In this document: positions 3,862-60,719 of the stretch, piece after piece
Position numbering within the stretch: the stretch's first letter is position 1
Layout: each line of letters begins with the position of its first letter
Assembly: GCF_963921235.1 (NCBI RefSeq)
Contig: NC_086124.1
Span: 27,838,001-27,902,000 of the forward strand
Length of the DNA stretch: 64,000 nucleotides
Direction of reading: 5' to 3'
DNA from: Mobula hypostoma
Taxonomy: Eukaryota
The notes under the pieces: generated by a model
What the model saw: the letters and a program-made list of their open reading frames with translations, nothing else
The model's database searches: none
Told to the model about the DNA's origin: nothing
Made by a program: the position numbers and the translations under genes

Positions 3862-4381
3862 GATAACATTTCCAAAATGATAGAAAAGTGTGGAAAATCA
3901 CATACAGTTTGTGAAAGATTAATAATACCTGCTGTATCAGAAATGCTCACCACTGTTCTCAAAGTGATGCCAGTATTTTAAAATCAATTCCTTTGAGTAA
4001 TAACTCTCCAGCTCATCATAGTGACGAAATGAGTGAAGACATTGAGTATCAGCTAGGCACAGAGCTACAAAAACAGAATTTGGGATACAACTGGATCAGT
4101 GAACTGTGCGAGACAACGAGGCATTGCTAATAGCATATGTACAGTTTATCAAAAATGGATAAGTTTATGAAGAGATTCTCTTCTTTAAAAAGTTAAAAAC
4201 AAATATCAATTGAGAATCAATCTATGAAGAGCTCAAAATGTATTTGAGAATAAAAATATCCTGATTAGGAATATGATTTCTTGTGCAACAGGCGGAACAC
4301 CATAAATGATGGGATGCCACGCTGGGTCAGTGGCATTTATGTAAAAAAAATCCATGTCTGTTTACAATCCACTGTCTAAAT

Positions 4382-6829: not shown

Positions 6830-8100
6830 TAATATGACACACCAAATTATCACTGGTGCAGCCAATTAGTTTTAGAAAACAAGTCTGTTTTTGGAGACCT
6901 GTGTGCAGTCAGGGTGTTTGAATTGATAGCAGTAAAGATATACCTGTATCTGGAAGGCCCAACTGCTCGTGAGTCAGTGTCCAGGTAAAAACTACACCAT
7001 GAAACAAAAGAACTCTCCAAGCAACTCCGCCAAAAGCACAAGTCAGGAGATGGATACAAGAAAAATTTCAAGTTACTGAATATCCCTTGGAGTGTAGTTG
7101 TTGATGATCAAGAAATGGAGAGAATATGGCACAGCTGTAAATCTTCCCAGAGCAGGCCGTCCTCAAAAACTGAGTGACCGTGGAAGAAGGGGACCAGTGA
7201 GGGAGGCCGCCAAGAGATCTACGACAGCTCTGGAGGGGTTACAAGCTTTAGTGGCTGAGATGGGAGAGACTGCGCATACAACGACTGTTGCCCGGGTGCT
7301 TCACCAGTCACTGCTTTACGGGACAGCAGCAAAGAGAAATCCATTGTTGAAAAAAACTCACACGAAACCTTGGCTAGACCTTGCCAGAAGGCATGTGGGA
7401 GACTCTGAAGTCATCTGGAAGAAGGTTCTATGGTCTGATGAATCCAAAAGTGAGCTTTTTGGCCATCAGACTAAACACTGTGCTTGGCATAAGCCAAACA
7501 CTGAACATCCTCAAAAACACACCATCCCTCCTGTGAAACATGCTGTGGGAATGCTTCACGGCAGCAAGCCTTAGAAGGCTTGTGAAGGTAGAGGGTAAAA
7601 TGAACGCAGCAAAATACAGGGAAATCCTGGAGGAAAACCTGATGCATTCTGCAAGAGAACTGCGATCTGGGAGAAGATTTGTTTTCCAGCAAGACAATGA
7701 CTCCAAGCATAAAGCCGAAGCTACAGGGGAGTGGCTTAAGAACAACAAAGTTAATGTCCTGGAGTGGCCAAGTCAGAGTCCAGCCCTCAATCCAATCGAG
7801 AATTTGCGGCTGGGCTTGAAAAGAGCTGTGAGCAGTTTTGTAAAGAAGAATGAGGAAAATTTGCAGTATCCAGATGTGCAAAGCTGATAGAGACCTATCC
7901 ACACAGACTCAAGGCTGTAATTGCTGCCAAAGGTGCATCTACTAAATACTGACTTGAAGGAGGTGAATACTTATGCAATCAAGTATTTTGTGTTTTATAT
8001 TTGTAATTAATTTGGATCACTTTGTTGAGAGCCAAATTAAATCCACTGTGATTTAATAGAAAATGAAACTTCTGGGGTGGGGGGTGTGAATACTCTGTAT
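6830..8100 (+). mobile_element. Degenerate Tc1/mariner transposon
   Basis: ORFs 7098-7574 and 7540-7887: GRPQKLS, VLWSDESK, FQQDNDSKH, WPSQSPALNPIENL. Confidence 0.9.
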
Positions 8101-8104
8101 CTAT

Positions 8105-10913
8105 CAAGAATATCACTGGTAAAGAGCTCTTCTGTTCTTCAGGTGGATGTTTGAAAGCAAAGGACGGTACCATTATCATAGAAAAAGATGAGATTATGAA
8201 CAAATGGACTGAGTATATTCAGGAATTGTTTGAAAACAATAAGGAGAAATTAAGAAAAATATTGAAGGTCCAAGTATTTTAAAATCTGAAATTCGTAATG
8301 CAATAAATAAGATGAAGAAAGGAAAGGCAGCAGGTCCTGAGGAATTGAAAATTTTACTGATTTAATCAATTACATTTATGAGACTGGAATAATACCAGGA
8401 GAGATGAAAAAATCAGTATTTATCACTCTTCCTAAGAGAATGTGAATTACATAGGACTATAAGTTTAATGAGTCATATTACCAAGATACTTCGAAGAATT
8501 TTGATGACAAGAGCTAAAAATAAGATACAAGCTGAAATAGGCAAAGAACAATGTGGTTTTGTGAAAGACAAAGGTACAAGAAACGTAATATTGATGTTAC
8601 GGCTGCTATCTGTCATGGTCCGGTCCGTAAAGTCCGTATTCCGGTTCACGGTCCGGTCCATCGACCCTTGCTCCAGGTTTTCCTATCTACCCTGTTTCTG
8701 TTCTTGTTGAGCTAAGTGAGGCAGCTGATACTCATTGGGGCTGGATTGTTCTTGTCCTTACTCCTTGTATCCCTTCCTCTGCCTTCTGTTTCCTCGCCTG
8801 AAGCCCTGCCTTGTCTTGCCGGTAACTCTTGCCTCGCCTGAAGTTCTCGTCTTGCCCTGCTTTGCCAGTAGCCTTGCCTTGTCTTGCTGTTTGGTCCTGG
8901 AGCTACCCTGTACCTAGCTCCCTTCCTGTCCCTTGCCTCCGCCCAGGTAAGCCAGGCCGTCTTGCCGTTACCTGGGGTTGGTTCTGTCCCATCCTGTCCC
9001 TTGCCTCCGCCCAGATAAGCCAGGCCGTCTTGCCGTTACCTGGGGTTGGTTCTGTCCCTTCCTGTCCCTTGCCTCTGTCGGGTGGTGAACCACGCCCTGC
9101 CCAGGTGAACCGCGCCCTGCCCAGGAGCAGCCAAGCCTTGCCTCAAGTCTCACGTCTCCTGCCTCCTGCCAAGCCTTGCCTCAAGTCTCCTGCCTCATCT
9201 CAAGCCTCCAGCCTCCAGCCTCCTGCCAAGCCTCGCCTCAAGTCTCCTGCTTCCAGCCTCATCTCAAGCCTCCAGCCTCCTGCCAAGCCTTGCCTCGTTT
9301 CTTGCCTAGCCTCGAGCCTGAAGACTCCAGCCTCTAGCCTCTTGCCAAGCGAAGTCTCTAGCCTCTTGCCAAGCCAAGCCAAGTCTCTAGCCTCCAGCCT
9401 CTTGCCAAGCCAAGCCAAGTCTCTAGCCTCTAGCTTCAAGCCTGAAGACTCCAGCCTCCTGCCTCCTGCCAAACCTTGCCTCTAATCTCTAGCCTCAAGC
9501 GTGAAGACTCCAGCCTCGTCCTGCCTGTCTGCCAAGCCTCGTCCTTGCCTGGTTCTGGGGACCGAGCCAGAGGCAAGACCCAGGTACTGGGTCCTTGTCC
9601 AGTCTCTGGCTCGGAGTCCAAGCCCGAGCTCCTAGTTCCCTTGTTCAGTCCTGTTCCAGGTTCCTGGTTTTCCTGTCCATGTCCTTGCCATCGCCCTGTA
9701 TCCTAGTCCTGTCCCTAGTACTTCAGTGTCTGTGTCTTGCCCTTGGGTCCGTTCCCAGCCACCCGCCTTATGACACTATCAGAACGAGCTATTCAAGTGC
9801 AAAAAGATTTGTTTGTTTGTTTTATCGACTACACAAAAGCATTTGATAACGTAAAGTACGAGAAGTTACTTGCAATACTACAGAAAACTCTAAATCTAGA
9901 TTCGAAAGACCTCCGCCTAATCAGAAATCTGTACTGGGAATAAACTGCTGCTGTAAGAATAGATAGAGAAGTGAGTCAGTTTATGAAAAATCAAGAGAGG
10001 CGTTAGACGAGGGTGTGTTTTCTCCCCTGATTTATTTAATGTGTACAGTGAAACAATATTACAAAAAATAAGAGACATCTTGGGAATCAAAGTTGGCGGT
10101 GAAAACATCAATAATTTCAGATATGCAGATGACACTGTGTTAATTGCAAGTATGGAGGAAGAACTACAAAACTTAATTGATATAGTTGTTGAAGAAAGTG
10201 CAAAAATGGGTTTATCTATCAATTGCAAAAAGACATAACGTATGGTGATATCCAAAAAGGACAATCCTATCTGCAGGCTGAGTTTAAATGGGAAGACATA
10301 AAACAAGTAAAGGACTTTTGCTACTTAGGAAGCTGGGTGACATCAGATGGCAGGTGCGACATGGACATCAAAAGAAGAATAGGGATGGCAAAAGACACCT
10401 TTATGAGAACAAAGAGTACACTGACCAATACTAAACTAGGCATGACAACCAGCCTCAGAGTACTGAAATGTTACGTTTATCCAGTTATACTTTATACTTT
10501 ATGTTACATGGCTCAGAATGTTGGACAATATCTAGTAACACGAGGAAATGAATTGTAGCAGCACAGATGTGGTTTTTGAGGAGGAATAAGAATATCATGG
10601 ACAAAACGAATATCTAACGAGGATGTCATGAACAGAGCAAACACAAAAAGAGAAATAATGTATGAGATCATGAAAAGGCAACGTGACTTCATTGGACATG
10701 TGATTAGGAAAGAGGAGTTAGAATGCACGGTAATTATGGGAAAGATTGAAGGGAAGAAAGCAAGAGGAAGACAAAGACAAATGATGATGGAGAGAGCAGA
10801 CAGAGAATTGGAAATGAATATCAATGAATTGATCCACTTGACCCGAAACAGGAGTGTGTGGGCCATGGCAGTCAAAGCTCAAACTGGGCTCGGCACCTGA
10901 TGATGATGATGAT
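8105..10913 (+). mobile_element. RTE-clade LINE, 5'-truncated, split by a solo LTR
   Basis: [30 protein letters not shown] motifs; (GAT)n 3' tail near 10899-10913. Confidence 0.88.
8611..9775. mobile_element. Solo LTR with internal tandem repeats
   Basis: TGTCAT...ATGACA termini; 5-bp TSD CTATC (8606-8610, 9776-9780); removing it restores the RTE frame LMLRLLSERAIQVQKD. Confidence 0.85.
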
Positions 10914-11160
10914 CTATCAATATTATGTATCACTATGTACTGCTGCTACAAAACAACATTCATGACCTATGTCGGTGATACTAAACCTGATTCTGAAATA
11001 ATAGTACTGTCACTGGCTTGAATTTATAGTAAATGTATTTTTGTTAAAGAAAAAAGGGGATACTGTTCCCGGCACTTGTAGAATTGGTTGTAGTTCAAGG
11101 TTAAAATAACTTCCTCTGTTCAACATGAGCTTGTATTCAATCATCCAGTTAACCACTTAC

Positions 11161-11424
11161 AGTTCAGGGTCAGAACATTCTGGTAAACGCTCTCTGCAAT
11201 GAAAGGGACGAAGGCTTGGTATGGTTGACTTCAATGACAGCCCGGGGGTTGCCCAGGTCTCTGATGAAAGCTTCCAAAAGTGAAACGCTGGCCCCAAATT
11301 TCCTCACAGAGAAATCAACGTAAATGACATCTTTACCGTCGTAACCAAATCACAGGTCCGTTCTCGAGAACCACGGAGCTGTGCTGGAGTAGATTGTCCA
11401 GCTGATGTACATCCCAGATAAACA
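11161..11424 (-). pseudogene. Degenerate MHC beta1-domain exon (W-category WB-like), head-to-head with the alpha gene
   Basis: Minus strand: acceptor ctatccttctaattag|, donor T|GTAAGT, 264 nt, phase 1-1 at both ends. The middle reads DL*FGYDGKDVIYVDFSVRKFGASVSLLEAFIRDLG (YDGxD motif of class I alpha2 / WB beta1) in a different frame from the two ends, so two compensating frameshifts plus a TGA are needed. No frame is open across the exon. Confidence 0.7.
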
Positions 11425-12099
11425 CTAATTAGAAGGATAGTTTAAGAGTCATCTCAAAGCCATTCTGAGTTGGGAATGAGTTACTTAAGACAAGGTGATT
11501 TCTATCTCCTGAGTTGCAGACTGCATCCATCAGTTACAGGTTCAATCTCTTTCCTTTTATGTTAGACATCACAACATTAATGCCTCAACAAACTCTATAG
11601 AACCATACAGCATAGAAACAGCCCCTTCAGCCCAACTGGTGCATGCTGGCCAAGATTCACATCCAAACCAATACTACTTGTCCATATTTGGCACACATCA
11701 TTTACCCTGTTTGCACTCCCTGCCTTCCTCCCTTTTCCCTCTCCCCCACCTTGAAATCTTTCTTATCCATGTACCTTTCAAATGTTTCTCCCCCGCCTGC
11801 CTCAGTCAATTCCTCTCGTAGTTTGTCGTATATAGACACACATAGCTCTCCAACTGGGACAAGGCCTCTTCTCATTACAATCATCGGGATGAGGTTCAGG
11901 AGGCTGAGGAGCCAGCTGCTGCCATCAGATTTCGGAACAGTTCATGAATCCACAAACACTACTTCACTGTTCTTTTGCTTTTGCACTAATTTATGGTCTA
12001 TGCACTGTACTGCCGCTGTAAAACTACAAATGAACAGAATCAGGTTTATTTTCACCGGCGTCTATTAGCAGCAGCAATAACTGATTTTGGAGAAAAAAA

Positions 12100-12600
12100 A
12101 AGACAACCAAGTAAATCAATTACAGTATATTGAATGGATTAAAATATATTTTTAAAAAAGTGAGGTAGTGTTCATGTTTTCAATGTCCATTTAGGAATCT
12201 TATGGCAGTGTGGAAGAAGCTGTTCCTAAATCGCTGAGTGTGTGCCTTCAGGCTTCTGTACCTCCTTCCTGGCGGTAACAATGAGAAAAGATCATGCCCT
12301 GGGTGATGGGGGTCCTTAATAATGGACACTGCCTTTCTGAGGTACGACTCCTTGAGTACTATGGAGGCTAGCACCCAAGATGGAGCTGACTACTTTTACA
12401 AATTTCTGTAGCTTCCTTTGGTCCTGTACCTGCCCCCTACCATACCTGACAGTGATGCAGCCTGTCAGAATGCTCTCCACAGTACATCTACAGATATTTT
12501 TAGGTGTTTTAGGTGACAAACCAAATCTCTTCAAACTCCTAATGAAATATTGTCACTGTGTCGGCTTTTTTATAGCTGGATCAATATGTTGGAATCAGGT
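12100..12600 (-). mobile_element. Rex1/Babar-type LINE 3' fragment (similar pieces at 19205-19660, 46420-47560, 51860-52270)
   Basis: HHPGHDLFSLLPPGRRYRSL...RFRNSFF C-terminal motif; LFIDYSSGFNTIV RT motif in the 19.2 kb copy. Confidence 0.7.
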
Positions 12601-12839
12601 TAGGTCCTCAGAGATCTTGACACCCAGGACTTGAAATTGCTCACTCTCTCATTGTGTCCTAAACAAAACTCATAATTTAAACTGATTCTGATACTGACCA
12701 CCCTCTGGGTGAAAGAGTTGCTCCTCAGGCTCATAGTAAATCTCTCTCCTCTCATTTTAAACCTACATTCTAGTTCTCGATTCCCCATCGCTGGGGAAAA
12801 GACTGCACATTCACCCTACATATGCCGTTAATGATTTTG

Positions 12840-12927
12840 GAAGGTGGAAATGAGGGGGATCAAACTGAGCAAGGTTAGGAAGGAGGAGGAGGAGGAGGAA
12901 GGAGCGATCTCCATAAATTCCCTCCAT
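12840..12927 (-). pseudogene. Candidate leader exon remnant of the left-hand beta pseudogene (MEGIYGDRSFLLLLLLPNLAQ...)
   Basis: ATG at 12927 followed by a poly-Leu stretch, correctly oriented between the beta1 exon and the alpha promoter; runs into a CR1 fragment with no phase-1 donor. The poly-Leu could simply be a (GGA)n microsatellite. Confidence 0.25.
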
Positions 12928-12959
12928 TTAAGTGACACCCAACGCCATCCCCTCCCATT

Positions 12960-13480
12960 TGTCCCTCCCACCCACCTTTCCCACTAATCCCCCAGGCAGT
13001 TCGAAAACCATCTCCCATCATAAACCAATTCCTCCTTCCAGTTATTCCCTCTCTCCTCCTGCGCCCACCCCCTGAGAATCAGTCTGCACTGCCTCCTCAC
13101 ACACACCCCTTCAGCACAAATCTCTGAAACCACCCCCTTAAAATCAGCACTTTCCCTCATCACTCACTCCACATTTACCTGCTCACACTTTGCACAGACC
13201 TGCTTAGCTTCAACCAGTCCTCCAACCCATCAGTCCCCCATCTGCAATCACCTTCCAACCCCTGCACCACCCAGCCACACAACTCCCAGGCTCTGCATCT
13301 GTCTCATTCTTTCCACCCTCTGCACCATTCTTCACCCCACCCTCTGATCTACCTGCTCAACACCTAATGCACCCACCCTTGTCAGTCCATGCCCTCTCCC
13401 CCTTCCCTGCGCACTCACACATCACTTCCATGATCTACAGCCACCCTTCTGAATCCATCTGCTCAACACCCTATCACTGC
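12960..13480. repeat. C-rich low-complexity tract
   Basis: Strongly C/A/T-skewed sequence with recurring ccaccc/ccatc words; no clean period determined. Confidence 0.6.
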
Positions 13481-13839
13481 TCGGTCTAAACCATGTAGAT
13501 GTGCGGCCGCGCAGTTACTGAAATGCTCCCGCTCACATAGCCATCGTAGCTGTGCAGCTGGAATTTTCTTTAGTGCTGACTGCGAACGTGCATTCAGTTT
13601 TATGAATTAAATCAAATGTAAATCCAGGAGCGGACTAGAAGTGGAACATGTAGATGATCTGATGAGGGCACAGAAGTATCTTTCATCTGGATGTGAAATT
13701 AATCTGGATGACGTTTACAGGCAAAAGATTTGTAATAAAGACAGACAAGAGAAAGTTTATGAAACTAGCAAGATTTTCTTTGTTGTGCTGTATTTAATTA
13801 TGCCCTTCAATTAATACATAAAATAAAATGTATGTGATT

Positions 13840-14445
13840 CTAAAAATGCAAACACGAGAAAATCTGCAGATGCTGGAAATTCAAGCAACACACATCAAAG
13901 TTGCTGGTGAACGCAGCAGGCCAGGCAGCATCTATAGGAAGAGGTACAGTCGACGTTTCGGGCCGAGTCCCTTCGTCAGGACTAACAGGAAAAAAAGAGA
14001 TAGTAAGAGATTTGAAAGTGGGAGGGGGAGGGGGAGATCCGAAATGATAGGAGAAGACAGGAGGGGGAGGGATGAAGCCTAGAGCTGGGAGGTTGATTGG
14101 CAAAAGGGATACAAGGCTGGAGAAGGGGGAGTATCATGGGACGGAAGCCCTTGAAAGAAAGCAGAAAAGGGAAGGGAGCACCAGAGGAAGATGGAGAACA
14201 AGTGCCTGTAGTCTCCCTTCTCTAGCCTTGTATCCCTTTTGCAATCAACCTCCCAGCCCTTGGCTTCATCACTCCCCCTCCTGTCTTCTCCTATCATTTT
14301 GGGTCTCCCCCCCCCACTTTCAAATCTCTTACTACCTCTTTTTTCCGTTAGTCCTGACGAACGGTCTCGACCCGAAACGTCGACTCTACCTCTTCCTATA
14401 GATGCTGCCTGGCCTGCTGCGTTCCACCAGTATTTTGTGTGTGTT
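13840..14445. mobile_element. Non-autonomous Penelope-derived insertion with inverted terminal repeats
   Basis: Left and right arms are reverse complements, each with a hammerhead motif; 14-bp TSD AAATGTATGTGATT (13826-13839, 14446-14459). Confidence 0.85.
13948..13983 (-). ncRNA. Minimal type I hammerhead ribozyme motif in a Penelope terminal repeat
   Basis: Minus strand AGTC-CTGACGA-A-GGG-ACTCGG-CCC-GAAAC-GTC-GACT: stem I AGTC/GACT, intact CUGAnGA and GAAA cores, stem II GGG/CCC, palindromic ACGU helix III, GUC cleavage triplet. Confidence 0.7.
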
Positions 14446-15189: not shown

Positions 15190-15620
15190 CACCCCCCCCC
15201 ATCCCGAGTCAGCCAGGCACCACTGATTGGCTGCCGCGTCTTCCCGCCAGAAAGACCATCCACACACGCCCTACCCCATCTCCGGGCGCGCGACATTACC
15301 GCCGGCGGGCCGCTCGCGCTCCCCGGGCGCGCGCCATCACAGACGTCGGCCCACTCGCGCTCCCGCCGGAGGCTCGGCTTGGGTGGAGGAGGAGGAGACT
15401 GAGGTCGGTGGGCGGGTTGAATGGCGGCGGCGTCTCCTCCTCCACCCGTCGCTCTTTTGCTTTCGGGACGGTTTCTGCCATGGGTCGTTATCCCGCTGCG
15501 TGGGCGCTCCTCCTGCTCCTCCGCCCCTGTTCGGGGACTGCCTACAAGCTGGCCGGTGAGTCGATTCCTGTCGCTGCGATCGCCGCCCGGTCAACTTGCT
15601 GTAAAGTTGTTGCTAAGGGT
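15190..15620 (+). promoter_or_regulatory. CpG-island promoter of the alpha gene with inverted CCAAT/Y-box
   Basis: Dense CpGs (e.g. ccgggcgcgcg, gccggcgggccgctcgcgc) in an otherwise CpG-poor window; CTGATTGG at 15223-15230, identical to the MHC class II Y-box core; an X2/AP-1-like CGAGTCA just upstream. Confidence 0.55.
15480..15555 (+). CDS. WA: alpha-chain exon 1, signal peptide MGRYPAAWALLLLLRPCSGTAYKLA
   Basis: gccATGG Kozak context, hydrophobic LLLLL core, donor G|GTGAGT at 15555/15556, lies in a CpG-rich island. Confidence 0.85.
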
Positions 15621-18600
15621 GGGATCTTGCTGAGTAGACGTCCCTGGGGTCATTAACCATTTCTTGGGGTGGGGAGGGCGGTAGCGTTCGGATCTTGCTA
15701 AGCACATTCTACTTGGCGTCTTGCTGGCTTGGTGTTAAACTACCTGGTTCGACCAAACTTGGAAAATTAGGTTCGTGCTAGGAAGGATGGGAACCAAGTT
15801 TAATATCAGGATATTGAAATTGGGATGTGGAAGCTCGAGAAAAAGATGCACAGGAGATTTACCAGGATTAGAGATCAGGAGCAGACTAGGGCTTTTCTCT
15901 TTGAAGTGAAGGAGGATGAGAGGTGACTTGATAAAGGTGTACAAGATGATAAGAAACACCTATAGTAGAGTGGACAGTGGAAGACTTTGCCCCCAGGGTG
16001 GCAATGGCTAACAGGAGGGGCCATATCTATAAGGTGTTTAGAGGAAAATACAGGGGGAATGTCAGGGGTAGTATATTTAGGTGCGTAACCTGGTACTGCC
16101 AAGGTTGTCATTAGGGACATTTAAGAGACTCTTAGATACGCACATAGCTGACAGAATAATGGAGGCTGCTGTGTGAGGGAAAGTTTGGATTGACCCTGGA
16201 GTAGATCAAGGGGTCGGCACAACAATGTGGACCGAAGAGCTGGTACTGCGATCTACTGTTCTATGCACATGGTTGGTGGGATCTTGCTGTGGGCGTGCAG
16301 GGATGGGGAGGGAGGAGTTGTGTTGTGGGATCTTGCCCTGCACCTGTTGGGTGGGGGCCGTACTATGGATTGAATGGGAATTTGTTTGATTGTGCCTTGC
16401 CCGTGTTGCATGGACGCTTGCCATGTGCAGACTAGATGGGGATTGTTGTCGTGTTATAGACTTGTACAACACACAACTGGACCCTTTTGCCCACCATGTG
16501 TTTGCTGACATTTTTTCCCATGTATGCTAATTCACCCCCCCCCCACATTAGGACCATATCCTGATGATATATGTACTTTGAATATACTTATACACCTTGC
16601 CCCTTTACGTGTCTGTCCAAATACCTTTTAAACATAATGATTGTGCCAATTTCCACAGCCTCCACTGGCAGCTCATTCTAGATATCAACCATTTTTTATA
16701 TAAGGAAAAAAAAGCATACCCCTTCGGATCTCCTTTAAAACTCATTCCTTTCACTTGAAATTTGTGCCCTCTTGTTTCCATTGTGTATGGATTGGTTGGG
16801 ATGTTGTTGTGTAACTGCTGAGTGGGATCTTGCCATGTACATAAGGTTGGAACTTGTCACAGAGTAGGATCATGTTTGTGCTTTGTGCATGTATGTAGAT
16901 GGGTGAGTTATTTTTGGGTGAGTCATAAGACACACTACATAAAGAGCAGGGTAATTTCTCTCAATATCCCAAGGCCAATATTTCAAAAAGGATATTGTGC
17001 TTTCCCAGCGTATATGACAAATAAATTCCTCTCGGGCTTCAATTGGTACCTGTATTCGGTTTGAAACCCGAGAAGAGTTGATTTGACAAATGATTTTGTT
17101 CTCAGTTTCCTGTTTGTGCTCTTTATCTCATGGCTCCCCTGTAGATCAAACATCTACCTTTATCTTAAATATATTCAATGGCCCTGGCTCCTTAGCTTTC
17201 TGGAGTACAGAGAGTAGAAACTCCCAGCCCTCTTGAAAAGAATTCCTCATCTCCATTCTCAATGAGCAATACCTTATTTTGAAGCCGTGCAATCCAGATG
17301 TGAATTCCCTCAGGAAGCCCTGGCTGGATCACACTTGAAGTATTGTGTTCAGTTCTGGCCGCCTTATTATAGGAAGGATGTGGAAGCTTTATAAGGGGTG
17401 CAGAGGAGCTTTACTAGAATTTGAGAACATGTCTTATGAAGATAAGTTGAGCAAGCTAGGGCTGTTCTCTTTTGAGACAAGGAAGACGACAGATGACTTG
17501 ATAGAATTGTACAAGATGGATCTGCACTTTGTATTTTCAGTTGCTTCATTCATGAGTTCAAGTCTTTTGTGTCATTTGATATGAGAGGTCAGTGGAGAAT
17601 GGCCAGACTGGTTCAAGTCGACAGGAAGGCGACTAACTCAAATAACCATGTGTACTAACAGTGGTGTGCAGAAGAGCATCTCTGAACACCCAACACGTCG
17701 AAACTTGAAGTGGATGGCACAGCAGAAGACCATGTACTTACACTCGTTGGTCACTGTATTAGGTACAGGAGATACCTAATAAAGTGGCCACTGAGGGTGA
17801 ATAAGTGTTTGTGTGTGTTCTTGTTTAATGTCCATACCTAAGGTCTGGTCTCCAGTTGCATTGGAATTCCTCATCATTGACCAAGACCTCACTCTTGTCA
17901 ACATCACGTTGTAAATGATGTACAAGAGCCACTCCACATTAAAAATATTCACAATCTGTCATAGCATATCACCCTTAGCCTAAGAAGACATGATCATAAA
18001 AAATATTGGTATAATGCAAGTAATTCTAAGATTCAAAGTACATTTATTATCAAAGTGTTTATACAGAATACACTTGTGAGTGGACAGCACATAGAATTTC
18101 AAACATCAAACCGGGGGTCTAGTAGTATTCAGTTCAGTGCCCTGCCGCTAGCTGGCTACAGGCTGCAGGGAAAAGCATTCTTTGCTAAGCGATGCAGATC
18201 GCATAGATTGCCCCGATCAAATCACTCAAAGGTAGCAAAAAAAAGAGTAACCAGAATCCAGGGATATATGCTCAAAGCATGGCAACACTTGTGGCTGTCC
18301 AGCACAATCCTCGGACTGTGTTGGCAGTTGACATCAGTGACGCGTTTCTCTGTATGTTTTCATTCAATTTTTAAATCTTTTTATTAATTATTATTGAAAA
18401 TTGACAAAGAAAAATACATTAAAATAATCACGTCAATATATCAATAAATATAATAAGAATCAAACTATTAACCAAACTAAACAGTATATCAACAATAATA
18501 ATTAAAAAAAACAAAATGTTAAAGCTATTTTTTTTGAAAAAAGGAAGAAGGAAAAGAGAACCCCTATTAACTAAAACAAAAAATCCCCAACTAACAACCA

Positions 18601-21600
18601 AAAAAAAAACGAGAAAAAAAAAACCCATTTGGAGCACAAACCCGGAGCTATACGCCATACAAGCTTCTATTAAAAAAAAAAGACATCAATCCGCCAGCCA
18701 AATCCATTTACCCAAGAATCAGAAGGGAACCATCTTAAGTAACTGAAATCAAATGATAGTAGCAGGCAAAGGAGCCCCACCTTTTCTCAAAAGTCAAATC
18801 GAGGATCAAAAGTTCGACTTCTGATTTTTTCCAAACTAAGACCTCTGTATGTTTTAATGATTCAATGTACATGTGACAAATAAAACTAATTTATATTCTT
18901 TACTTTTAATATCTGTTAGCTTCACCAAAGAACATTTTACAGACATTAAATGTGCCCTCTCACATGCCAACTATTTAGATATTTCCTTGCTGAGTGACAA
19001 TGACCACTTTGGTAGGGTCTGAGGAGGATTTGGGACCGTGAAACACAATAAGCACTCTGTACTCCGTGGCCACTTTATGAGGTACCTCCTGTACCTCCGG
19101 TACCTCATAAAGTGGCTACTGATTATATGTTCATGGTGTTCTGCTGCTGTAGCTCATCCACTTCAAGGTTCAACATGCTGGCCTGAAACTCCTGTAATTT
19201 ACATATCACAACACTAGGTCTACAGTGGAGACATTCTCACTGGCTCTCCACTCAGTCTTGCAGCACCTGGACATCAGCAATACCTACATCAGGCTGCTGT
19301 TTATTGATTACAGCTCAGGGTTCAACACCATCGTGTTCTCAGTACTAATCAACAAGTCCCAAAATCTGGGCCTCTGTACTTCCGTCTGCAGATGGATCCT
19401 TGACTTCCCTTAGTCAATGCAGATTGGAAATAACATCTTCTCACTGGCTCACTTCAAGGATGTTTGCTTAGCCCACTGCCCTACTCTACACCCACAACTG
19501 TGTGGTTAGGTACAGTTCAAATGCTACCTAGAAAAATTGCTGTTGACACAACTATTGTTGGCAGAATTTTAGATGGCGACAAGGAGGCGTACATGATTGA
19601 GATAGATCAGCGGGTTGAGTGGTGTCGCAACAGCAACCTTGCACTCAATGTCACAAAGACAAATTGCATGTCTTACCCATGTACACCAAGGTCCATCTGT
19701 CCTTTGACCATTCATAGTGTGTGTGTCCTACAATTGTGGAGTGAAATCCCATTGTCCCTTGACACTTACCAACATTCACTGTGTGTGTCCAACCCTTCTA
19801 CAGTGAGGTCCCTCTGTTTTTTGACACTCTACACCATAGGTGGTGTGTGCCCTACCTTTGTATACCATCTGGCCCAGGATATTCCACATCATTCACGGTG
19901 TATGCCAACAGCCTTGTACTGCCAACACCCTCTGAAACTCAACACTGCCCACTGTTCACTATGTGTCCTTACCCTTATACACCGAGGTCCCTCTTTCCCT
20001 CAATTCTCCACACCATTCATGATGTGTGTCCTACCCTCGAACACCGAGGTCACTTTGTCTCTCGACACTCCTCACCAGTCACATAGTCTCTCCGACCCTT
20101 GTACATAGAATTGCACTTGAACCCCGACTCTCCCCGCCACTCATGGTGTGTCTTTCCCTCTACACTGTGATGCCTCTGTCCATGACAATCCCTACCATTC
20201 AATATGCGTCTCCTACCCTTGTACACTGAGATCCCTCTATCCTTTGATATTCCCTTTAATAAACAGTGTTTGTCTTATCCTTCCAATGCACACAAAATGC
20301 TGAAGGAACTCAGCAGACCAGGCAGCATCTATGGAAAAAGTACAGTCGACATTTCGGGCCGAGACTCTTCAGAAGGACCCTTTATCCCTCTGCTGTAAGG
20401 TATTGGCCTGAAACGTCGACTGTACTATTTTCCATTGATGCTTGTTTGATTTTCTCTTGTTTGCCCTACGCTTGTACACCGAGATCCCTCTATCCCCCGA
20501 CACTCCCTATCATAAACAGTGTTTGTCCTACCCTAAAACACTGAGGTCCCTTTATCCCTCAGCACTCCCTAGTATAAACAGGGTTTGTCCTAGCCTTCTA
20601 CATTGAGGTCCCCCGTTCCTTGACTTCCCACTACTTATGGATTTTGTCTTTTGGATTTTGCCCTTGTACAGCGAAGTCTCACTATCTTTTGATGCTCCCC
20701 ATAGTTCACTCTGTGTGCAACCCTTCCACACCAAGGTTTCTCTGCTCCTGGTTACGACGTGTGCCAACTGAACCACTTGACCATTTTTGCATGTTTTTAT
20801 GCTGCCACATGATTGGCTAATAAGATATTTATGTTAATATACAATATATGTTAATATAGGAAATTAGAAATGTGTGCAATAAAGGAACAGCAGTTATAAT
20901 GGCTGACTTCAATCTACATGTAGACTGGGTGAACCAAATTGGTAAAGGTGCTGAGGAAGAGGATTTCTTGGAATGTATGCGGGATGGTTATTTGAACCAA
21001 CATGTCGAGGAACCAACTAGAGAGCAGGCTATTCTGGACTGGGTTTTGAGCAATGAGGAAGAGTTAATTAGCGATCTTGTCGTGAGAGGCCCCTTGGGTA
21101 AGAGTGACCATAATATGGTGGAATTCTTCATTAAGATGGAGAGTGACATAGTTAATTCAGAAACAAAGGTTCTGAACTTAAAGAGGGGTAACTTTGAAGG
21201 TATGAGACGTGAATTAGCTAAGATAGACTGGCAAATGACACTTAAAGGATTGACGGTGGATATGCAATGGCAAGCATTTAAAGGTTGCATGGATGAACTA
21301 CAACAATTGTTCATCCCAGTTTGGCAAAAGAATAAATCAAGGAAGGTAGTGCACCTGTGGCTGACAAGAGAAATTAGGGATAGTATCAATTCCAAAGAAG
21401 AAGCATACAAATTAGCCAGAGAAAGTGGCTCACCTGAGGACTGGGAGAAATTCAGAGTTCAGCAGAGGAGGACAAAGGGCTTAATTAGGAAGGGGAAAAA
21501 AGATTATGAGAGAAAACTGGCAGGGAACATAAAAACGGACTGTAAAAGCTTTTATAGATATGTAAAAAGGAAAAGACTGGTAAAGACAAATGTAGGTCCC

Positions 21601-24600
21601 CTGCAGACAGAAACAGGTGAATTGATTATGGGGAGCAAGGACATGGCAGACCAATTGAATAGTTACTTTGGTTCTGTCTTCACTAAGGAGGACATAAATA
21701 ATCTTCCAGAAATAGTAAGGGACAGAGGTTCCAGTGGGATGGAGGAACTGAGCGAAATACATGTTAGTAGGGAAGTGGTGTTAGGTAAATTGAAGGGATT
21801 GAAGGCAGATAAATCCCCAGGGCCAGATGGTCTGCATCCTAGAGTGCTTAAAGAAGTAGCCCAAGAAATAGTGGATGCATTAGTGATAATTTTTCAAAAC
21901 TCGTTAGATTCTGGACTAGTTCCTGAGGATTGGAGGGTGGCTAATGTAACCCCACTTTTTTAAAAAAGGAGGGAGAGAGAAACCGGGGAATTATAGACCG
22001 GTTAGCCTAACGTCGGTGGTGGGGAAATTGCTGGAGTCAGTTATCAAGGATGTGATAACAGCACATTTGGAAAGCGGTGAAATGATCGGACAAAGTCAGC
22101 ATGGATTTGTGAAAGGAAAATCATGTCTGACGAATCTCAAAGAATTTTTTGAGGATATAACTAGTAGAGTGGATAGGGGAGAATCTGTGGATGTGGTATA
22201 TTTGGATTTTCAAAAGGCTTTTGACAAGGTCCCACACAGGAGATTAGTGTGCAAACTTAAAGCGCACGGTATTGGGGGTAAGGTATTGGTGTGGGTGGAG
22301 AATTGGTTAGCAGACAGGAAGCAAAGAGTGGGAATAAACGGGACCTTTTCAGAATGGCAGGCGGTGACTAGTGGGGTACCGCAAGGCTCAGTGCTGGGAC
22401 CCCAGTTGTTTACAATATATATTAATGACTTGGATGAGGGAATTAAATGCAGCATCTCCAAGTTTGCGGATGACACGAAGCTGGGTGGCAGTGTTAGCAG
22501 TGAGGAGGATGCTAAGAGGATGCAGGGTGACTTGGATAGGTTGGGTGAGTTGGCAAATTCATGGCAGATGCAATTTAATGTGGATAAATGTGAAGTTATC
22601 CACTTTGGTGGCAAAAATAGGAAAACAGATTATTATCTGAATGGTGGCCGATTAGGAAAAGGGGAGGTGCAACGAGACCTGGGTGTCATTATACACCAGT
22701 CATTGAAAGTGGGCATGCAGGTACAGCAGGCGGTGAAAAAGGCGAATGGTATGCTGGCATTTATAGCGAGAGGATTCGAGTACAGGAGCAGGGACGTACT
22801 ACTGCAGTTGTACAAGGCCTTGGTGAGACCACACCTGGAGTATTGTGTGCAGTTTTGGTCCCCTAATCTGAGGAAAGACATCTTTGCCATAGAGGGAGTA
22901 CAAAGAAGGTTCACCAGATTGATTCCTGGGATGGCAGGACTTTCATATGAAGAAAGACTGGATGAATTGGGCTTGTACTCGTTGGAATTTAGAAGATTGA
23001 GGGGGGATCTGATTGAAATGTATAAGACCCTAAAGGGATTGGACAGGCAAGATGCAGGAAGATTGTTCCCGATGTTGGGGAAGTCCAGAACGAGGGGTCA
23101 CAGTTCGAGGATAGAGGGGAAGCCTTTTAGGACTGAGATTAGGAAAAACTTCTTCACACAGAGAGTGGTGAATCTGTGGAATTCTCTGCCACAGGAAACT
23201 GTTGAGGCCAGTTCATTGGCTATATTTAAGAGGGAGTTAGATATGGCCCTTGTGGCTACGGGGGTCAGGGGGTATGGAGGGAAGGCTGGGGCCGGGTTCT
23301 GAGTTGGATGATCAGCCATGATCATAATAAATGGCGGTGCAGGCTCGAAGGGCCGAATGGCCTACTCCTGCACCAATTTTTTATGTTTCTATGTTTCTAT
23401 GTTTCTATACCTAATGTGGCCACTGAGTGTTGTTTAAACATTAGTTGCAAAAACTGACAATGTGATTAAAAGTCTTCTTTTACAATAATCTTTTTATCCT
23501 TTCAGAGACAGACACATTGGAAGTCACCATCTTCTTTACAGATGACCTCAGCCTACCAGATGGGGCAGCCGAGTTGAAGATTCAGGATAGAAGCATTGGT
23601 TACTATGACACCACGTTACCAGGAGCTCAGTTTCACTTGGCTAACTTAGAACACTTCCGTAAAACTATTGATAGCCTGTTGGAAGAAAATAAGGAAAACA
23701 CAATCGCATTGGCAGAGCAGCTGATGGATCAGGCGAAGTTGTTAACCAACAACTCTCTCCCCCCAAATGGTGAGTCAAGATAGGAACGTGAGCAGCTCAG
23801 TGTACTGACTACCATCAGCCCAATAAAGTGTCCTCAGTATGGATTTTGCTTACAGTACAGGCCCTTTGGCCCACCGTGTTGTGATGACCTTTCAAACTAC
23901 ACCAAGATCAATCTAACCCTTTCCACCTACACAGTCCTCTAATTTCCTTTCATCTGTGTGCCTCTCTAAGAGTTTCTTAAATGCCCCTAATTTATTCACA
24001 TCCACCACCACCTCTGGTAGGGTGTTCCAAGCACCCACTAACTAGAGTTTTATAGAGCTGCAACATTACCTCCCAGCTCTTGAACTCAAAACTCTCCATC
24101 TGACATTACCTCTCCACCCGCCCCCACCCCCCCGTACTTTCTTCCAAACGCCTCAAAGTTATGCCGTGTTGTATTAGCCATTTCCACCCTGGGAAAGAGT
24201 CTTTGGCTGTCCACTCTGTCTATGCCTCTCATTATCTTGTACACCTCTATCAAGTCACTGCTCATCCTCCTCTTCTCTGAAGAGATAAGCCCTAGCCTAC
24301 TCAATCTATCCTCATACTGTAAGAGATGTTTTCTAATCCAGACACCATCCTATAAATCTCCTCTGCACCCTCTCTAAAGTTCTGCATCCTTGCTATAATG
24401 AAGCGACTAGAATTGAACACAAACAAGTGTGGTCTAAACATTACCTCGCGGCTCTTGAACTCAAACCCTCAACTGACAATGGCCAACACATCACAACCCC
24501 TTCTTAACAATCATTTCACTGAAAATACTTTAGCTGGAAATTTGAGTAAATGGCTGGCACTGTGGTACGCTGACATAATTAATCCTTTGTTGTGTCAGGA

Positions 24601-27452
24601 TACCACTGGCAGTTAGTTTCTCTCCCAGGGCTCCATTAGGTGGCTGATGTGAACGTTGATTGTCAAAGTGGGTCCAATGGCAGATGATCAGCGAGAAACC
24701 ACTTCACCTGCCTGCAGCAAAATGTTTCGGGCTGCTTTATTTCTATGCAGTAATACTGAATTTCAAAAGTAATTTTTATATCATTGGCGTTGCTAACGGG
24801 AATTACATGGACTTGGTTCACTATCTTCCCAATATGGTTGTGTTGCCGGCAGTGAGTTGGCAATCTCAGAGAACAGTGGATCATTTACTCTTCTTGCTGC
24901 TGCTGTCAGGAAGAGATACAGGAGCCTCAGGACTGACACCACCATATTCAGGAATAGTTGTTGGCTATCAACCATCAGGTTCTTGAATCACTGGTAATAA
25001 TTTCACTTGCCCCATCACTGAAATGTTCCCACACCTATGGACTCACTTTCCAGGACTCTTCATCTCATGTTCTCGATATGTGTTGATTATTTATTTCTTG
25101 TTGTTATTTTTTACCTTTTGTATTTGCACAGTTTGCCGTGTTTTACAGACAGGTTGTTTGTCCACCCTGTTGGGTGTGGTCTTCCATTGATTCATTTATG
25201 GTTATTGGATTTACCAAGCATGCCCACAAGAAATCAAATTCCAGGGCTGTATATAGTGAAATATATGTGCTTTGCTAATAAATTTACTTTGAACTCCAGA
25301 AGTTTGCATCTATGACTGATACGAATTAATAGATAATAATCATCATCTAATGCAACTGACAAAAAAAAATCTTCAACTTATTCTTTTAGAAATCGGTGAG
25401 CTCTATCTGTACTTAGAGAAACCAGCTGTCTTCGGGGAGGTAAACACTTTGACCTGTTTCATCAGCGGCTTTTTCCCACCAACCGTAATGGTAACGTTAC
25501 AGAAGAACGCACAGCCTGTCAATGGCGAAGTTAACTCCTCACACCTCTCATTTGGCAAAGATTGGCGATTTCAAGTGCTCCACTACACATACATCCAGCC
25601 AGCAGAAGGTGACATATACTCCTGTAGAGTGCTCCATAACATCAGCAAAGAGGAAAAAGTAATTTACTGGGGTAAGAGAATGTTATGGTTGTTATTCTAT
25701 AGATTTATTGAGTATGTCCACAGGAAAACAATAGGTACTTTGATGCTAAAGTTACTTTTTGAACTTTGAAAATACTCTGGGGTAAGTGATACAGGGCAGC
25801 AGAGTAGCATGGCAGTTAGTGCCGTGGTTTACAACACCAAATGTAAGATCAAGGTTTGATTCCTACTGCGGACTGTGAGGAGTTTCTACGTTCTCTCCGT
25901 GACCGCATAGGTTTTGTCCAGGCACACTGCTTTCCTCCCATGTTTCAAAGATGTATGGGTTAAGGTTAATGAGTTGTGGGTTGCTATGTTGGCACCAGAA
26001 GTGTGGCAGCATTTGCGAGCTGCCCTCAGCACGATCCTCACTGTTATGATTGGGTGCATTTATCTGTATGTTTTGATCTTTCAACGTACACATGGCAAAT
26101 AAAGCTTATCTCTGAAATCCAGCTCATTGCCTGCAGTGCTGACTGACAGCATTTTCCAGTGGAAGTGTTGTTGAGATCAGGAGCTTAGCAAATACAAAGA
26201 CAAGCTTCCCTTTGCGCATTTCAGCTAGTGTTGTACCACTCCAACCCAATCTGGAGCCGAGCCATAGATTCACTAATGAGGGGTAGTGCTGAAGCACTCC
26301 AACTGGATGAGATTGTTTTTAACCCTCGTGTTGCTCTGTTAGGTCAGTGAGAGGAAAACCAGCTCATGTTCCTGTTTACACTCAGTATCCAGCAATTCCC
26401 AGTGGAACGTGAGGATGCAATGTGACTATTTCGGTTTTATCTTGATCAATCCTGCTGCCAATATTGATACAGCACAGAATAGACCCTTCCAGCTGCACCA
26501 CCCAGCAACTCCCAAGTTTAACACTAGCCTAATCACAGGACAATTTATAATGACCAATTAACCCATCAACTAATACGCCATTGAACTGTGGGAGGAAACC
26601 GGAGCACTTGGTGGAAACCCATGTGGTAATAAGGAGAACATACAAACGACTTGCATACAGCTGCAGGAATTGAACCCAGTCACTGGTACTGTATGGTGCT
26701 AACCTCTGCACTACAGTGTTTTCATTTACTGATAGCCATTTAGTCATATAGTCATGGAAAAGTACAGCACAGAAGTAGGACATTTGCCCCACCTAGTCCA
26801 TGCCAAACAATTTAAACTGCCTACTCCCCTCGACCATAGCCCTCCAAACCCCTACATCCATATACCTATCCAAACTTCTCTTAAACGTTGAAATCAAGCT
26901 TGCATGCACCACATCTGCTAACAGCTCATTCCACACTCTCACAATCATCTGAGCGAAGTAGTTTCCCCTCATCTTCCCCTTAAACTTTTCACCTTTCACC
27001 CTTCACCCATGACCTCTAGTTGCAGCGCCACTCAACCTCGGTGGAAAAAGCCTATCTATACCCCTCATGATTTTGTATCTAAAATCAGTCTAGGGCTGAT
27101 CCTAGGAAAACTTTGGACACCTGGAACCTTTGCAACACCTGCTTCACTATTGGAAAGTATATTCAGCTGAGAAAGGGAAACAGGGAAGAGGACAATTTAG
27201 TTTCGCCAGCTCATCTTTGTTCAAACTGATTTAAAAACTAGTTCCCCGTTCAAAATATGAGTGTGTGCTTTGTTCACAGAACCAGAAGAACAAAGTCGTG
27301 CTGAAGGACTGGATACAAGCCAGATTGCTGTTTTGATCTGTGGGCTGATTATAGGAATACTTGGCACAGCAGCTGGACTCTACTTATGTTTTCAGTTGCG
27401 ACTGTCTGGCTGTGACTCTTGGACAGTCCGGATCAATCCCCCTTCTCAATAA
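15480..27452 (+). CDS. WA: MHC W-category-type alpha chain gene; spliced CDS join(15480..15555,23506..23769,25390..25671,27280..27452), 795 nt, 264 aa
   Basis: Four exons, all phase-1 junctions with GT/AG sites, splice into one open frame: leader, alpha1, Ig-C1 alpha2, CP/TM/cytoplasmic. alpha2 carries B2M-type residues (VTLQKN with Leu at the usual Ig Trp, LSFGKDWRF, YSCRVLH, terminal YW). TM has the class II alpha GxxxGxxGxxxG motif. MHC class II-type alpha chain is near certain; the W-category label rests on the by-eye motif match. Confidence 0.85.
18350..18845 (-). mobile_element. L1-clade LINE 3' end
   Basis: Minus strand LEKIRS...KRWGSF-type ORF2 C-terminus followed by a long T-rich 3' UTR. 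Confidence 0.6.
19665..20745. repeat. Degenerate ~61-bp tandem array in intron 1, interrupted by a Penelope terminal-repeat fragment (about 20290-20440)
   Basis: Recurring gtgtgtcctacccttgtacaccgaggtccctct words at about 61-nt spacing (e.g. 19783/19843, 19961/20022). Confidence 0.75.
20868..23408 (+). mobile_element. 5'-truncated young CR1 LINE in intron 1 (endonuclease tail plus RT, one +1 frameshift)
   Basis: ORFs 20872-21963 and 22016-23302 are broken by one extra T in the homopolymer of VTPLFKKG (about 21956-21961); (tttctatg)n tail ends about 100 nt before exon 2. Confidence 0.95.
23506..23769 (+). CDS. WA: alpha-chain exon 2, alpha1 (peptide-binding-type) domain
   Basis: Acceptor tttttatcctttcag|, donor G|GTGAGT, 264 nt, phase 1-1. 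ETDTLEVTIFFTDDLSLPDGAAELKIQDRSIGYYDTT...LAEQLMDQAKLLTNNSLPPN: strand-then-helix pattern with a C-terminal NNS sequon where class II alpha1 has its N78 glycan. Confidence 0.85.
25390..25671 (+). CDS. WA: alpha-chain exon 3, Ig C1-set alpha2 domain, beta-2-microglobulin-like
   Basis: Acceptor ttcttttag|, donor G|GTAAGA, 282 nt. NTLTCFISGFFPP...YSCRVLH Cys pair; SHLSFGKDWRFQVLHYTYIQPAEGDIYSCRV resembles B2M [31 protein letters not shown]. Confidence 0.93.
25793..26110 (+). mobile_element. tRNA-derived SINE in intron 3 (related copy on - at about 26500-26710)
   Basis: A-box-like tagcatggcagttag and B-box-like ggtttgattcc, then body and A-rich end. Confidence 0.55.
27280..27452 (+). CDS. WA: alpha-chain exon 4, connecting peptide/TM/cytoplasmic tail with stop
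   Basis: Acceptor tgctttgttcacag|; EPEEQSRAEGLDTSQIAVLICGLIIGILGTAAGLYLCFQLRLSGCDSWTVRINPPSQ*; G-LII-G-IL-G-TAA-G matches the class II alpha TM glycine motif. Confidence 0.88.
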
Positions 27453-60579: not shown

Positions 60580-60719
60580 TTTAACCCATGCTGAATCACT
60601 GGGTCTCAGATGACCAGACTGGGTATTTGGCCAACTGAGTATCTGTGGCTTTTTTTTAATGAAGTGTATGAAGAAAAAGTGTTCCCCGGACTGATGAGTA
60701 CATACAAAAATATTCCTAC

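What the first reader, a model, noticed from the sequence alone, without database searches (positions are those of the whole stretch)
11161..11424. Hidden disabled beta1 exon with a class I-type GYDGKD motif, head-to-head with the alpha gene
Seen: absent from the ORF track, but the minus strand has a 264-nt segment with a good acceptor and a GTAAGT donor (same length and phase as the alpha1 exon) containing *FGYDGKDVIYVDF..RKF. It has a TGA (plausibly CGA>TGA at a CpG) and two compensating frameshifts. Established: YDG is the class I alpha2 signature, whereas class II beta1 has YNxEE. Inference: this is the divergently transcribed WB partner, now a pseudogene. Its beta2/TM exons are not in the 11 kb to the left, so they are deleted or beyond position 1.
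Basis: partly seen in the sequence, partly recalled or inferred. Interest (0 to 1): 0.82.

Follow-up and report, generated by a model that had tools for sequence, protein, structure and literature searches.

The report
Dead W-category MHC beta1 exon relic
This is a real but long-dead leftover exon of a "W-category" MHC beta-chain gene in the lesser devil ray, lying back-to-back with an intact alpha-chain gene; it is an ordinary pseudogene fragment of a family described in 2021, not a new kind of gene.

Summary
The segment is real. The window is Mobula hypostoma contig C80. On the minus strand, 11414-11161 is a decayed copy of the beta1 (groove-domain) exon of a W-category beta chain (WB) of the WB_DS1-like type.

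Evidence for homology:
- A profile of eight ray WB beta1 domains scores it 22 bits (E 4e-5 in the window). Unrelated DNA scores 10 bits or less.
- hhalign of the copy family against living WB beta1 gives 97% probability, E 3e-11.
- The match starts at the first exon codon and ends at the conserved GTAAGT donor.

Lesions:
- The ancestral acceptor is lost (CAG to CTG).
- One codon is CGA to TGA.
- There is a 6-nt in-frame deletion.

Short-read contigs show the same lesions, also in a sister species. Six more dead copies lie on the same chromosome. Exon and flanks diverge at equal rates, so the exon evolves neutrally.

It lies 4 kb from, and head-to-head with, an intact WA_DS10-like gene. That is the published shark pairing, WA_DS10L/WB_DS1L. 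No beta2 or TM exon lies within 31 kb downstream.

The scan's other notes on this genome cover the living WA and WB genes, not this relic. Verdict: an ordinary pseudogene relic of low interest.

The parts
11161..11414 (-). Pseudo-exon: relic of a WB_DS1-like beta1 (membrane-distal domain) exon, 254 nt. The inferred ancestral length is 261 nt, phase 1-1.
   Evidence: The ray WB beta1 HMM aligns positions 1-60 to 11412-11233 and positions 69-84 to 11212-11165 in the -1 frame. tblastn of the neighbouring intact WB beta1 gives E 7e-5. hhalign gives E 3e-11.
11415..11417 (-). Lost ancestral splice acceptor: CTG here, CAG in paralogs L003, L004, L005, L006 and L017, and in the intact WB gene.
   Evidence: DNA alignment of the seven copies. 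Intact WB exon boundary ccag|GAATGCAC.
11425..11428 (-). The AG is absent from all six paralogous copies, so it is not the ancestral site.
   Evidence: the paralogs read TTTG or ATTG here. The sister-species contigs show no difference at this place.
11350..11352 (-). In-frame TGA stop. The codon is CGA (Arg) in the four L004-type copies, TGA in the 90% copy L002, and TAA in L003. Shark WB_DS1-like proteins have Arg at this position (LRFAYDG).
11329..11346 (-). GYDGKD motif, covering W-category/class I positions 32-37. G35 and D37 are kept. Position 32 is G, as in published teleost WB.
11252..11253 (-). Site of a 6-nt in-frame deletion found only in the window copy among the paralogs. Its state in the sister species is unknown.
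   Evidence: Sister-species contigs do not cover 11243-11253.
11213..11214 (-). Site of a 1-nt deletion, the single frameshift. It is shared with copy L002, and L003 keeps the base.
   Evidence: No indel is seen here in reads of the own or the sister species.
11155..11160 (-). Conserved splice donor GTAAGT. Copy L003 has GTAAGC, L002 has GTACAT, and the L004-type copies have lost it.
   Evidence: The intact WB beta1 exon ends ...ACGG|gtaagt in the same phase.
11415..11573 (-). Remnant of the intron upstream of the exon, homologous among the seven copies (74-94% identity).
15480..27449 (+). Intact WA_DS10-like alpha-chain gene, head-to-head with the relic. Exons: leader from 15480, alpha1 23506-23769, alpha2 about 25389-25670, CP/TM/CY 27270-27449.
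   Evidence: tblastn of Mobula birostris WA (P0012) finds all four parts open. C1-set Pfam hit E 1e-18. Splice sites read directly.

Best explanation
Window 11414-11161 (minus strand) is a non-functional relic of the beta1 exon of a W-category MHC beta-chain gene of the WB_DS1-like lineage, in Mobula hypostoma. The exon once encoded the membrane-distal groove domain of a chain that pairs with a WA alpha chain.

It can no longer be spliced or translated. Its acceptor is mutated, it carries a CGA-to-TGA stop and an uncompensated 1-nt deletion, and the rest of the gene (beta2, TM/CY exons) is gone from the locus. It has drifted neutrally since before several segmental duplications on this chromosome and before the split from a sister Mobula species.

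Inferred, not shown: it is what is left of the ancestral divergently transcribed partner of the adjacent, still intact WA_DS10-like gene. That WA chain must now pair with a WB chain encoded elsewhere in the cluster, for example the intact convergent WB gene 30 kb downstream.
For: Homology:
- tblastn of the neighbouring intact WB beta1 exon has its only significant hit in the 64 kb window here (E 7e-5).
- An HMM of eight ray WB beta1 domains scores 22 bits, E 4e-5, starting at profile position 1.
- The C-terminal helix piece matches profile positions 69-84 in the shifted frame and ends at the donor.
- In 202 kb of other loci, nothing unrelated exceeds 10 bits. The paralogous dead copies score 23-36 bits.
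- hhalign of the copy family against living WB beta1 gives 97.2% probability, E 3e-11, 58 colinear columns.
- Living WB beta1 passes Pfam MHC_II_beta (27.5 bits).

Motif: GYDGKD occurs in published teleost WB, and A32/G35/D37 is the W/class I signature.

Lineage: by-eye comparison with Dataset S1 shows the DS1-like pattern G-x-H-I-x-Q...L-R-F-A-Y-D-G.

Death and neutrality:
- Lesions were mapped on a seven-copy alignment.
- Exon identity equals flank identity: 0.92 vs 0.93-0.94, 0.76 vs 0.79, 0.79 vs 0.76.
- Substitutions are spread evenly over codon positions: 6/5/6, 20/14/13, 11/13/14.

Not an assembly error: short-read contigs of the same species match with 0 differences. Sister-species contigs show no difference at the lost acceptor, the TGA or the 1-nt deletion.

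Context:
- The intact WA ATG is at 15480 on the other strand.
- The shark pair WA_DS10L/WB_DS1L is published as head-to-head.
- Older locus B keeps a dead beta1 head-to-head with a dead WA.
- No Ig exon lies within 31 kb downstream.
Against: - Pfam and PDB sequence searches of the open pieces alone give nothing significant. There was no Pfam hit for the 59-aa window piece and no PDB hit. Paralog pieces hit only MHC_II_alpha weakly, at 15 bits against a cutoff of 23.
- A profile search of 1.84 billion proteins found no true relative, only a spurious LRR protein. No living gene of exactly this sub-lineage was found.
- No convincing leader exon was found between the relic and WA.
- Two other WA paralogs (loci D and E) have no such relic upstream.
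- The L004-type copies lie upstream of WB genes on the same strand, not next to WA genes. The relic's adjacency to WA could therefore be a product of rearrangement.
- The DS1-like assignment rests on by-eye comparison of about 38 columns, not on a tree.
Confidence: 0.82

Rival explanations
1. The relic is a genuine WB beta1 pseudo-exon, but it was never the partner of this WA gene. It was brought next to WA by the segmental duplications, deletions and transposon insertions that shaped the cluster.
For: - Seven copies exist. Four of them (L004-type) lie 15-32 kb upstream of intact WB genes on the same strand, two with a dead beta2 exon downstream.
- Locus A carries the relic next to a WB 3' part, with the 47 kb holding WA absent.
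- WA paralogs D and E lack a relic upstream.
Against: - An older copy (locus B, about 76-79% identity) also has the relic head-to-head with a WA alpha2 remnant.
- Orientation and lineage pairing match the published shark WA_DS10L/WB_DS1L pair.
Confidence: 0.13
2. The exon is still functional, and the stop, frameshift and acceptor change are assembly errors or are bypassed.
For: The GTAAGT donor and a usable AG upstream are present.
Against: - Short-read contigs reproduce the sequence with no differences. A sister species shows no difference at the lesions that its contigs cover.
- Copy L002 shares the same acceptor loss, TGA and 1-nt deletion.
- Substitutions follow a neutral pattern.
- There are no downstream exons.
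- No contig of the one presumed RNA run lies on the exon.
Confidence: 0.02
3. The resemblance to an MHC domain is chance, found by choosing among frames in non-coding DNA.
For: The open pieces alone give no significant Pfam or PDB hit. Reading it needs a stop read-through and a frame change.
Against: - Unbiased six-frame scans put it first, with a 16-bit gap over noise.
- Profile-profile comparison gives E 3e-11.
- Exon start, end, phase and length all coincide with the living WB beta1 exon.
Confidence: 0.02

Closest known systems
W-category beta chain genes of the WB_DS1-like lineage in cartilaginous fish (Okamura et al. 2021, PNAS, PMC8713811)
   Same: - The beta1 pattern matches: G-x-H/Y-I-x-Q/W ... 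L-R-F-A/G-Y-D-G-E/K-D.
- It is a phase-1 exon of about 260 nt.
- It lies head-to-head with a WA_DS10-like gene, as in the great white shark pair WA_DS10L/WB_DS1L.
   Different: It is only a lone, disabled beta1 exon with no beta2, TM or CY exons. Position 32 is G, not the A of shark DS1-like genes; G is the teleost WB state.
Living Mobula hypostoma WB genes (P0001 and relatives; NCBI names them 'class II histocompatibility antigen beta chain-like')
   Same: Same chromosome cluster and the same exon boundaries and phase. Identity is 28-31% over the first 58-60 residues, and the C-terminal helix motif is shared (PF-A-E-V-Q-V--L).
   Different: The living genes are intact, with YNGE instead of YDGKD. 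The Mobula copies have lost D37 (V/T/A/E), which the relic and the stingray orthologs keep. The relic's sub-lineage is far diverged from them.
Banded houndshark WB_DS1_n2, a possible pseudogene linked to WA_DS10 (PMC8713811 SI)
   Same: It is a precedent for a decayed DS1-like beta gene beside a working WA_DS10 gene.
   Different: The shark copy keeps an Ig-like exon that is spliced into a read-through cDNA with WA_DS10. Here only the beta1 exon survives, and no transcript was seen.
MHC class I alpha2 domain (AYDGKD motif around D122)
   Same: It shares the YDGKD core. D37/D122 is the residue that hydrogen-bonds W61 (the paper's numbering) of beta2-microglobulin. The window's WA alpha2 keeps the matching LSFGKDW motif.
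   Different: The exon belongs to a class II-type beta chain architecture. No Pfam MHC_I hit was found for the relic pieces.

Membership tests
W-category WB beta chain, beta1 domain (WB_DS1-like) | Sequence homology to WB beta1 domains | tested here: met
   HMM 22 bits, E 4e-5. hhalign 97.2%, E 3e-11. tblastn E 7e-5. Background is 10 bits or less.
W-category WB beta chain, beta1 domain (WB_DS1-like) | W-category/class I characteristic residues A32, G35, D37 | tested here: met
   The relic reads F-G-Y-D-G-K-D, so G35 and D37 are present. Position 32 is G, as in published teleost WB (YGYDGKD).
W-category WB beta chain, beta1 domain (WB_DS1-like) | Class II-type exon structure: separate beta1 exon, phase 1-1, boundaries as in WB genes | tested here: met
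   The profile match starts at the first codon after the ancestral acceptor and ends at the conserved donor. The inferred ancestral length is 261 nt, against 258 nt in the living gene.
W-category WB beta chain, beta1 domain (WB_DS1-like) | Downstream beta2 Ig C1 exon (G61, P57) and CP/TM/CY exons | tested here: not met
   None was found within 31 kb downstream using three WB proteins and the lineage's own dead beta2 as queries. Dead beta2 exons exist only downstream of the L004 and L005 copies.
W-category WB beta chain, beta1 domain (WB_DS1-like) | Head-to-head pairing with a WA gene (WA_DS10-like for DS1-like) | tested here: met
   The WA ATG is at 15480 on the + strand and the relic's 5' end is at 11414 on the - strand. 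WA alpha1/alpha2 resemble the little skate WA DS10-like rows. The pairing is published.
W-category WB beta chain, beta1 domain (WB_DS1-like) | Open reading frame and expression (a working gene) | tested here: not met
   There is a TGA, a 1-nt deletion and a lost acceptor. Substitutions look neutral. No contig of the one presumed RNA run lies on the exon (weak evidence).
Classical/conventional MHC class II beta (Pfam PF00969) | Pfam MHC_II_beta match above the gathering score; YNxEE-type motif | tested here: not met
   The relic and its paralog pieces have no PF00969 hit. The motif is YDGKD. Living Mobula WB beta1 does pass PF00969 (27.5 bits).
MHC class I heavy chain alpha2 (Pfam PF00129) | Pfam MHC_I match; alpha1-alpha2-alpha3 exon order in one gene | tested here: not met
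   There is no PF00129 hit. Its relatives are class II-type two-domain beta chains.

The most novel reading that the evidence does not exclude
The relic marks a partner swap. The ancestral cis-linked, divergently transcribed WB_DS1-like partner of this WA_DS10-like gene died in the Mobula lineage. That partner still carried the D37 residue that bonds W61 of the WA alpha2 domain. The surviving, expressed WA now depends on a diverged WB paralog set that has lost D37. The W-category interdomain contact has therefore been rebuilt in devil rays.
Probability: 0.3. Interest if true: 0.35.

Novelty: new member of a known kind. Interest (0 to 1): 0.2.

Why it matters
It adds little new. It documents that the W-category cluster of a devil ray went through birth-and-death evolution, as class I and class II families do. 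It shows that a living WA gene can outlast its head-to-head WB partner. It also supports the published head-to-head WA_DS10L/WB_DS1L arrangement as ancestral for rays as well as sharks. For annotation, it is a pseudogene fragment that gene finders miss.

Tried and rejected
- PDB phmmer of the 59-aa open piece gave no hit at E up to 10.
- Pfam on the window piece gave no hit. On paralog pieces it gave only a sub-threshold MHC_II_alpha hit (15 bits).
- hmmsearch of the family profile against 1.84 billion proteins gave one hit, an LRR-repeat (NLR-like) protein matched seven times on a short leucine-rich stretch. I rejected it as spurious. No living close relative was found by this route.
- The search for a WB leader exon between 11415 and 15480 found only a 7-residue EPPAGAR match (E 0.28) in GC-rich, low-complexity DNA. 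The DNA alignment was out of order. It is left unresolved.
- The search for beta2 or TM remnants to the left found nothing.
- MAFFT misplaced the short C-terminal pieces, so they were tested separately.
- Assembly error is rejected by the reads.
- Expression: the one presumed RNA run laid covers only the flanking high-copy repeats. This is weak negative evidence.
- One own-genome search and one run search failed because the machine was busy. The run search was repeated successfully.

Full report
**What the window is.** The window is contig C80:27838001-27902000 of a 3.48 Gb vertebrate genome. The neighbouring beta-chain gene is 100% identical to an NCBI protein of Mobula hypostoma on a contig of the same length. 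The genome is therefore the lesser devil ray.

**The observation.**
- The open piece FGYDGKDVIYVDFSVRKFGAS... is preceded by a TGA at 11352-11350.
- A GTAAGT donor lies at 11160-11155, and an AG at 11426-11425.
- No ORF of 70 aa or more covers the segment.

**Is it an MHC exon?** Direct searches of the open piece fail. There was no PDB hit and no Pfam hit. The decisive comparison is with the living W-category beta genes of rays.

The intact gene just right of the window has a beta1 exon at window coordinates 74084-73827 (258 nt, phase 1). A tblastn of that exon against the whole window has one significant hit, exactly here: 11412-11233, E 7e-5, 28% identity over 60 residues.

I built an HMM from eight beta1 domains of Mobula, Hemitrygon and Hypanus WB proteins. 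Scanned over all six frames with stops written as X, it gives these results.
- The segment scores 22 bits (E 4e-5). The next unrelated place in the window scores 5.6 bits.
- In 202 kb of other loci, nothing unrelated exceeds 10 bits.
- The match begins at profile position 1 and runs colinearly to position 60.
- The last helix (profile 69-84, FVPFIAESVYQNVLTL) follows in the -1 frame and ends one codon before the donor.
- A profile of the relic's paralog family against the living WB beta1 alignment gives hhalign probability 97.2%, E 3e-11.
- The living beta1 domains pass Pfam MHC_II_beta (27.5 bits).

**The motif.** According to Okamura et al. 2021 (PMC8713811), A32, G35 and D37 of the beta1/alpha2 domain are shared by W-category and class I, and they contact W61 of the light-chain-like domain. 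The string GYDGKD occurs eleven times in that paper's supplementary file of sequences, for example in white sucker and grass carp WB.

In Dataset S1, shark and skate WB_DS1-like rows read G-x-H-x-x-Q ... L-R-F-A-Y-D-G-E/T-D/E. The relic family reads G-M-H/Y-I/V-S-Q/W ... L-R/stop-F-G-Y-D-G-K-D. By eye it is DS1-like, and so are the living Mobula WB genes. This lineage call is a by-eye comparison of about 38 columns, not a tree.

**Anatomy of the damage.** The segment has six DNA paralogs, all on C80.
- L002 is 90% identical.
- L003 is about 76% identical.
- L004, L005, L006 and L017 are about 72-79% identical.

The seven-way alignment shows the following.
- The ancestral acceptor is CAG|GGATG. 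It is kept in L003 and the L004-type copies, and it matches ccag|GAATG of the living gene. In the window and L002 it is CTG. The true exon start is therefore 11414, and the acceptor is lost.
- The stop codon is CGA in the L004-type copies, TGA in the window and L002, and TAA in L003. The CpG-decay guess is therefore right. Shark DS1-like proteins have Arg at this position.
- The window copy alone has a 6-nt in-frame deletion, between 11253 and 11252.
- The window and L002 share a 1-nt deletion, between 11214 and 11213. L003 keeps that base and reads on in frame (QFVPIIAEN).
- There is thus one uncompensated frameshift, not two compensating ones. 254 + 6 + 1 = 261 nt is the inferred ancestral exon length.
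- The L004-type copies carry 12-, 5- and 36-nt deletions and have lost the donor. All seven copies are dead.

**Neutral evolution.** The exon is no better conserved than its flanks: 0.917 against 0.942 and 0.925 for L002, 0.763 against 0.790 for L003, and 0.787 against 0.755 for L004. Substitutions are spread evenly over the three codon positions. The exon has drifted without selection since before these duplications.

**Reads.** Logan contigs of a DNA run of the same species tile 10999-11650 with no differences and no indels. Contigs of a second organism hold about 30% of the 31-mers, which corresponds to roughly 96% identity, so it is a sister species. They cover 11115-11242 and 11254-11483. 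They show only five substitutions in the exon and none at the TGA, the 1-nt deletion or the lost acceptor.
- The lesions are therefore real and older than that species split.
- The first run may be from the individual that was assembled, so it is not fully independent.
- The site of the 6-nt deletion is not covered in the sister species.
- The one presumed RNA run covers only the high-copy repeats that flank the segment.

**Context.**
- *The WA gene.* It is intact: leader from 15480, alpha1, alpha2, and CP/TM/CY ending at 27449. Its alpha1 and alpha2 resemble the little skate WA DS10-like rows. The relic's 5' end is 4,066 bp from the WA start codon, on the other strand.
- *Published arrangement.* The paper reports head-to-head WA/WB pairs in sharks. 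It lists the great white shark pairs as WA_Nds3L/WB_DS3L, WA_DS10L/WB_DS1L and WA_DS5L/WB_Nds5L. Position, orientation and lineage all fit a dead partner.
- *Locus B.* This older inverted paralogous locus (29.66 Mb) keeps the same arrangement: a dead beta1 about 4 kb from a dead WA alpha2 on the opposite strand.
- *Missing exons.* No beta2-like or TM exon lies in window 1-11160 or in 20 kb further left, using three living WB proteins and the lineage's own dead beta2 as queries. That space is filled with transposon ORFs.
- *A fuller pseudogene.* Two L004-type copies do have a frameshifted beta2 exon, 4 and 11 kb downstream. A fuller pseudogene of this sub-lineage therefore exists elsewhere.

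**What weakens the partner reading.**
- The L004-type copies sit upstream of living WB genes on the same strand, not beside WA genes.
- Locus A (24.09 Mb) is colinear with window 365-14085 and then 61324-65284. The 47 kb holding WA is therefore absent there.
- Two other WA paralogs have no relic upstream.
- I found no convincing leader exon.
- The profile search of 1.84 billion proteins found no living member of this sub-lineage, only a spurious LRR hit.

**Verdict.** The interpretation (dead WB beta1 exon, probably the old head-to-head partner of WA) is supported. It is a pseudogene fragment of a family described in 2021, inside a multigene cluster that shows ordinary birth-and-death evolution, so its interest is low.

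Other notes of this scan on the same genome describe the living WA and WB genes and a half-dead pair to the left. They agree with what I found for the WA gene and the neighbouring WB gene. None describes this relic on other DNA.

Noticed in passing
window 40694-40786 (-) and 60616-60822 (-): The C-terminal 31 residues of the neighbouring WB protein P0001 match 93.5% at 40694-40786. The stretch at 60616-60822 matches residues 229-291 at only 59%. The WB gene's last exon(s) may lie about 20 kb further into the window than the TM exon, within 13 kb of the WA 3' end.
   Followed up: no
G000:C80:24086501-24106500 (L026+L027) vs window 365-14085 and 61324-65284: Locus A is a 90-95% segmental duplicate of the window. 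It lacks the 47 kb between 14085 and 61324, which holds the WA gene and the WB 3' exons. This is either a deletion there or an insertion here.
   Followed up: partly
G000:C80:24283168-24286946 (within L037): The WA paralog at 24.28 Mb has in-frame stops in its alpha1 and alpha2 exons, so it is a pseudogene. The paralog at 28.00 Mb is open and is 94-98% identical to the Mobula birostris WA P0012.
   Followed up: partly
G000:C80:27923000-27923450 (-) and 24394318-24394768 (+): The two dead beta2 exons downstream of the L005 and L004 relics are 100% identical over 451 nt. The nearby dead beta1 pieces of those two copies differ (89% at the protein level). This suggests a very recent duplication or gene conversion of part of the unit.
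   Followed up: no
window 10950-10997 and 11598-11650: High-copy repeats flank the relic, with word depths in the thousands. Some contigs from elsewhere join about 10996 to about 11604-11625. These short-sided joints come from other repeat copies, not from a deletion allele.
   Followed up: partly
P0001, P0003, P0005, P0008, P0009 vs P0007, P0010, P0011: All living Mobula WB beta1 domains have V, T, A or E at position 37 (AYNGE-x). The stingray orthologs and the dead relic keep D37. The window's WA alpha2 still has the LSFGKDW motif whose W61 bonds D37 in class I.
   Followed up: no
G000:C80:27705409-27718732 and 27784518-27817721: Two further head-to-head pairs of more distant WA-like and WB-like Ig exons lie left of the window. 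One alpha2 has stops. Their beta1 exons read GYDGETIVYYD and YAYDGVTIMYYN.
   Followed up: partly
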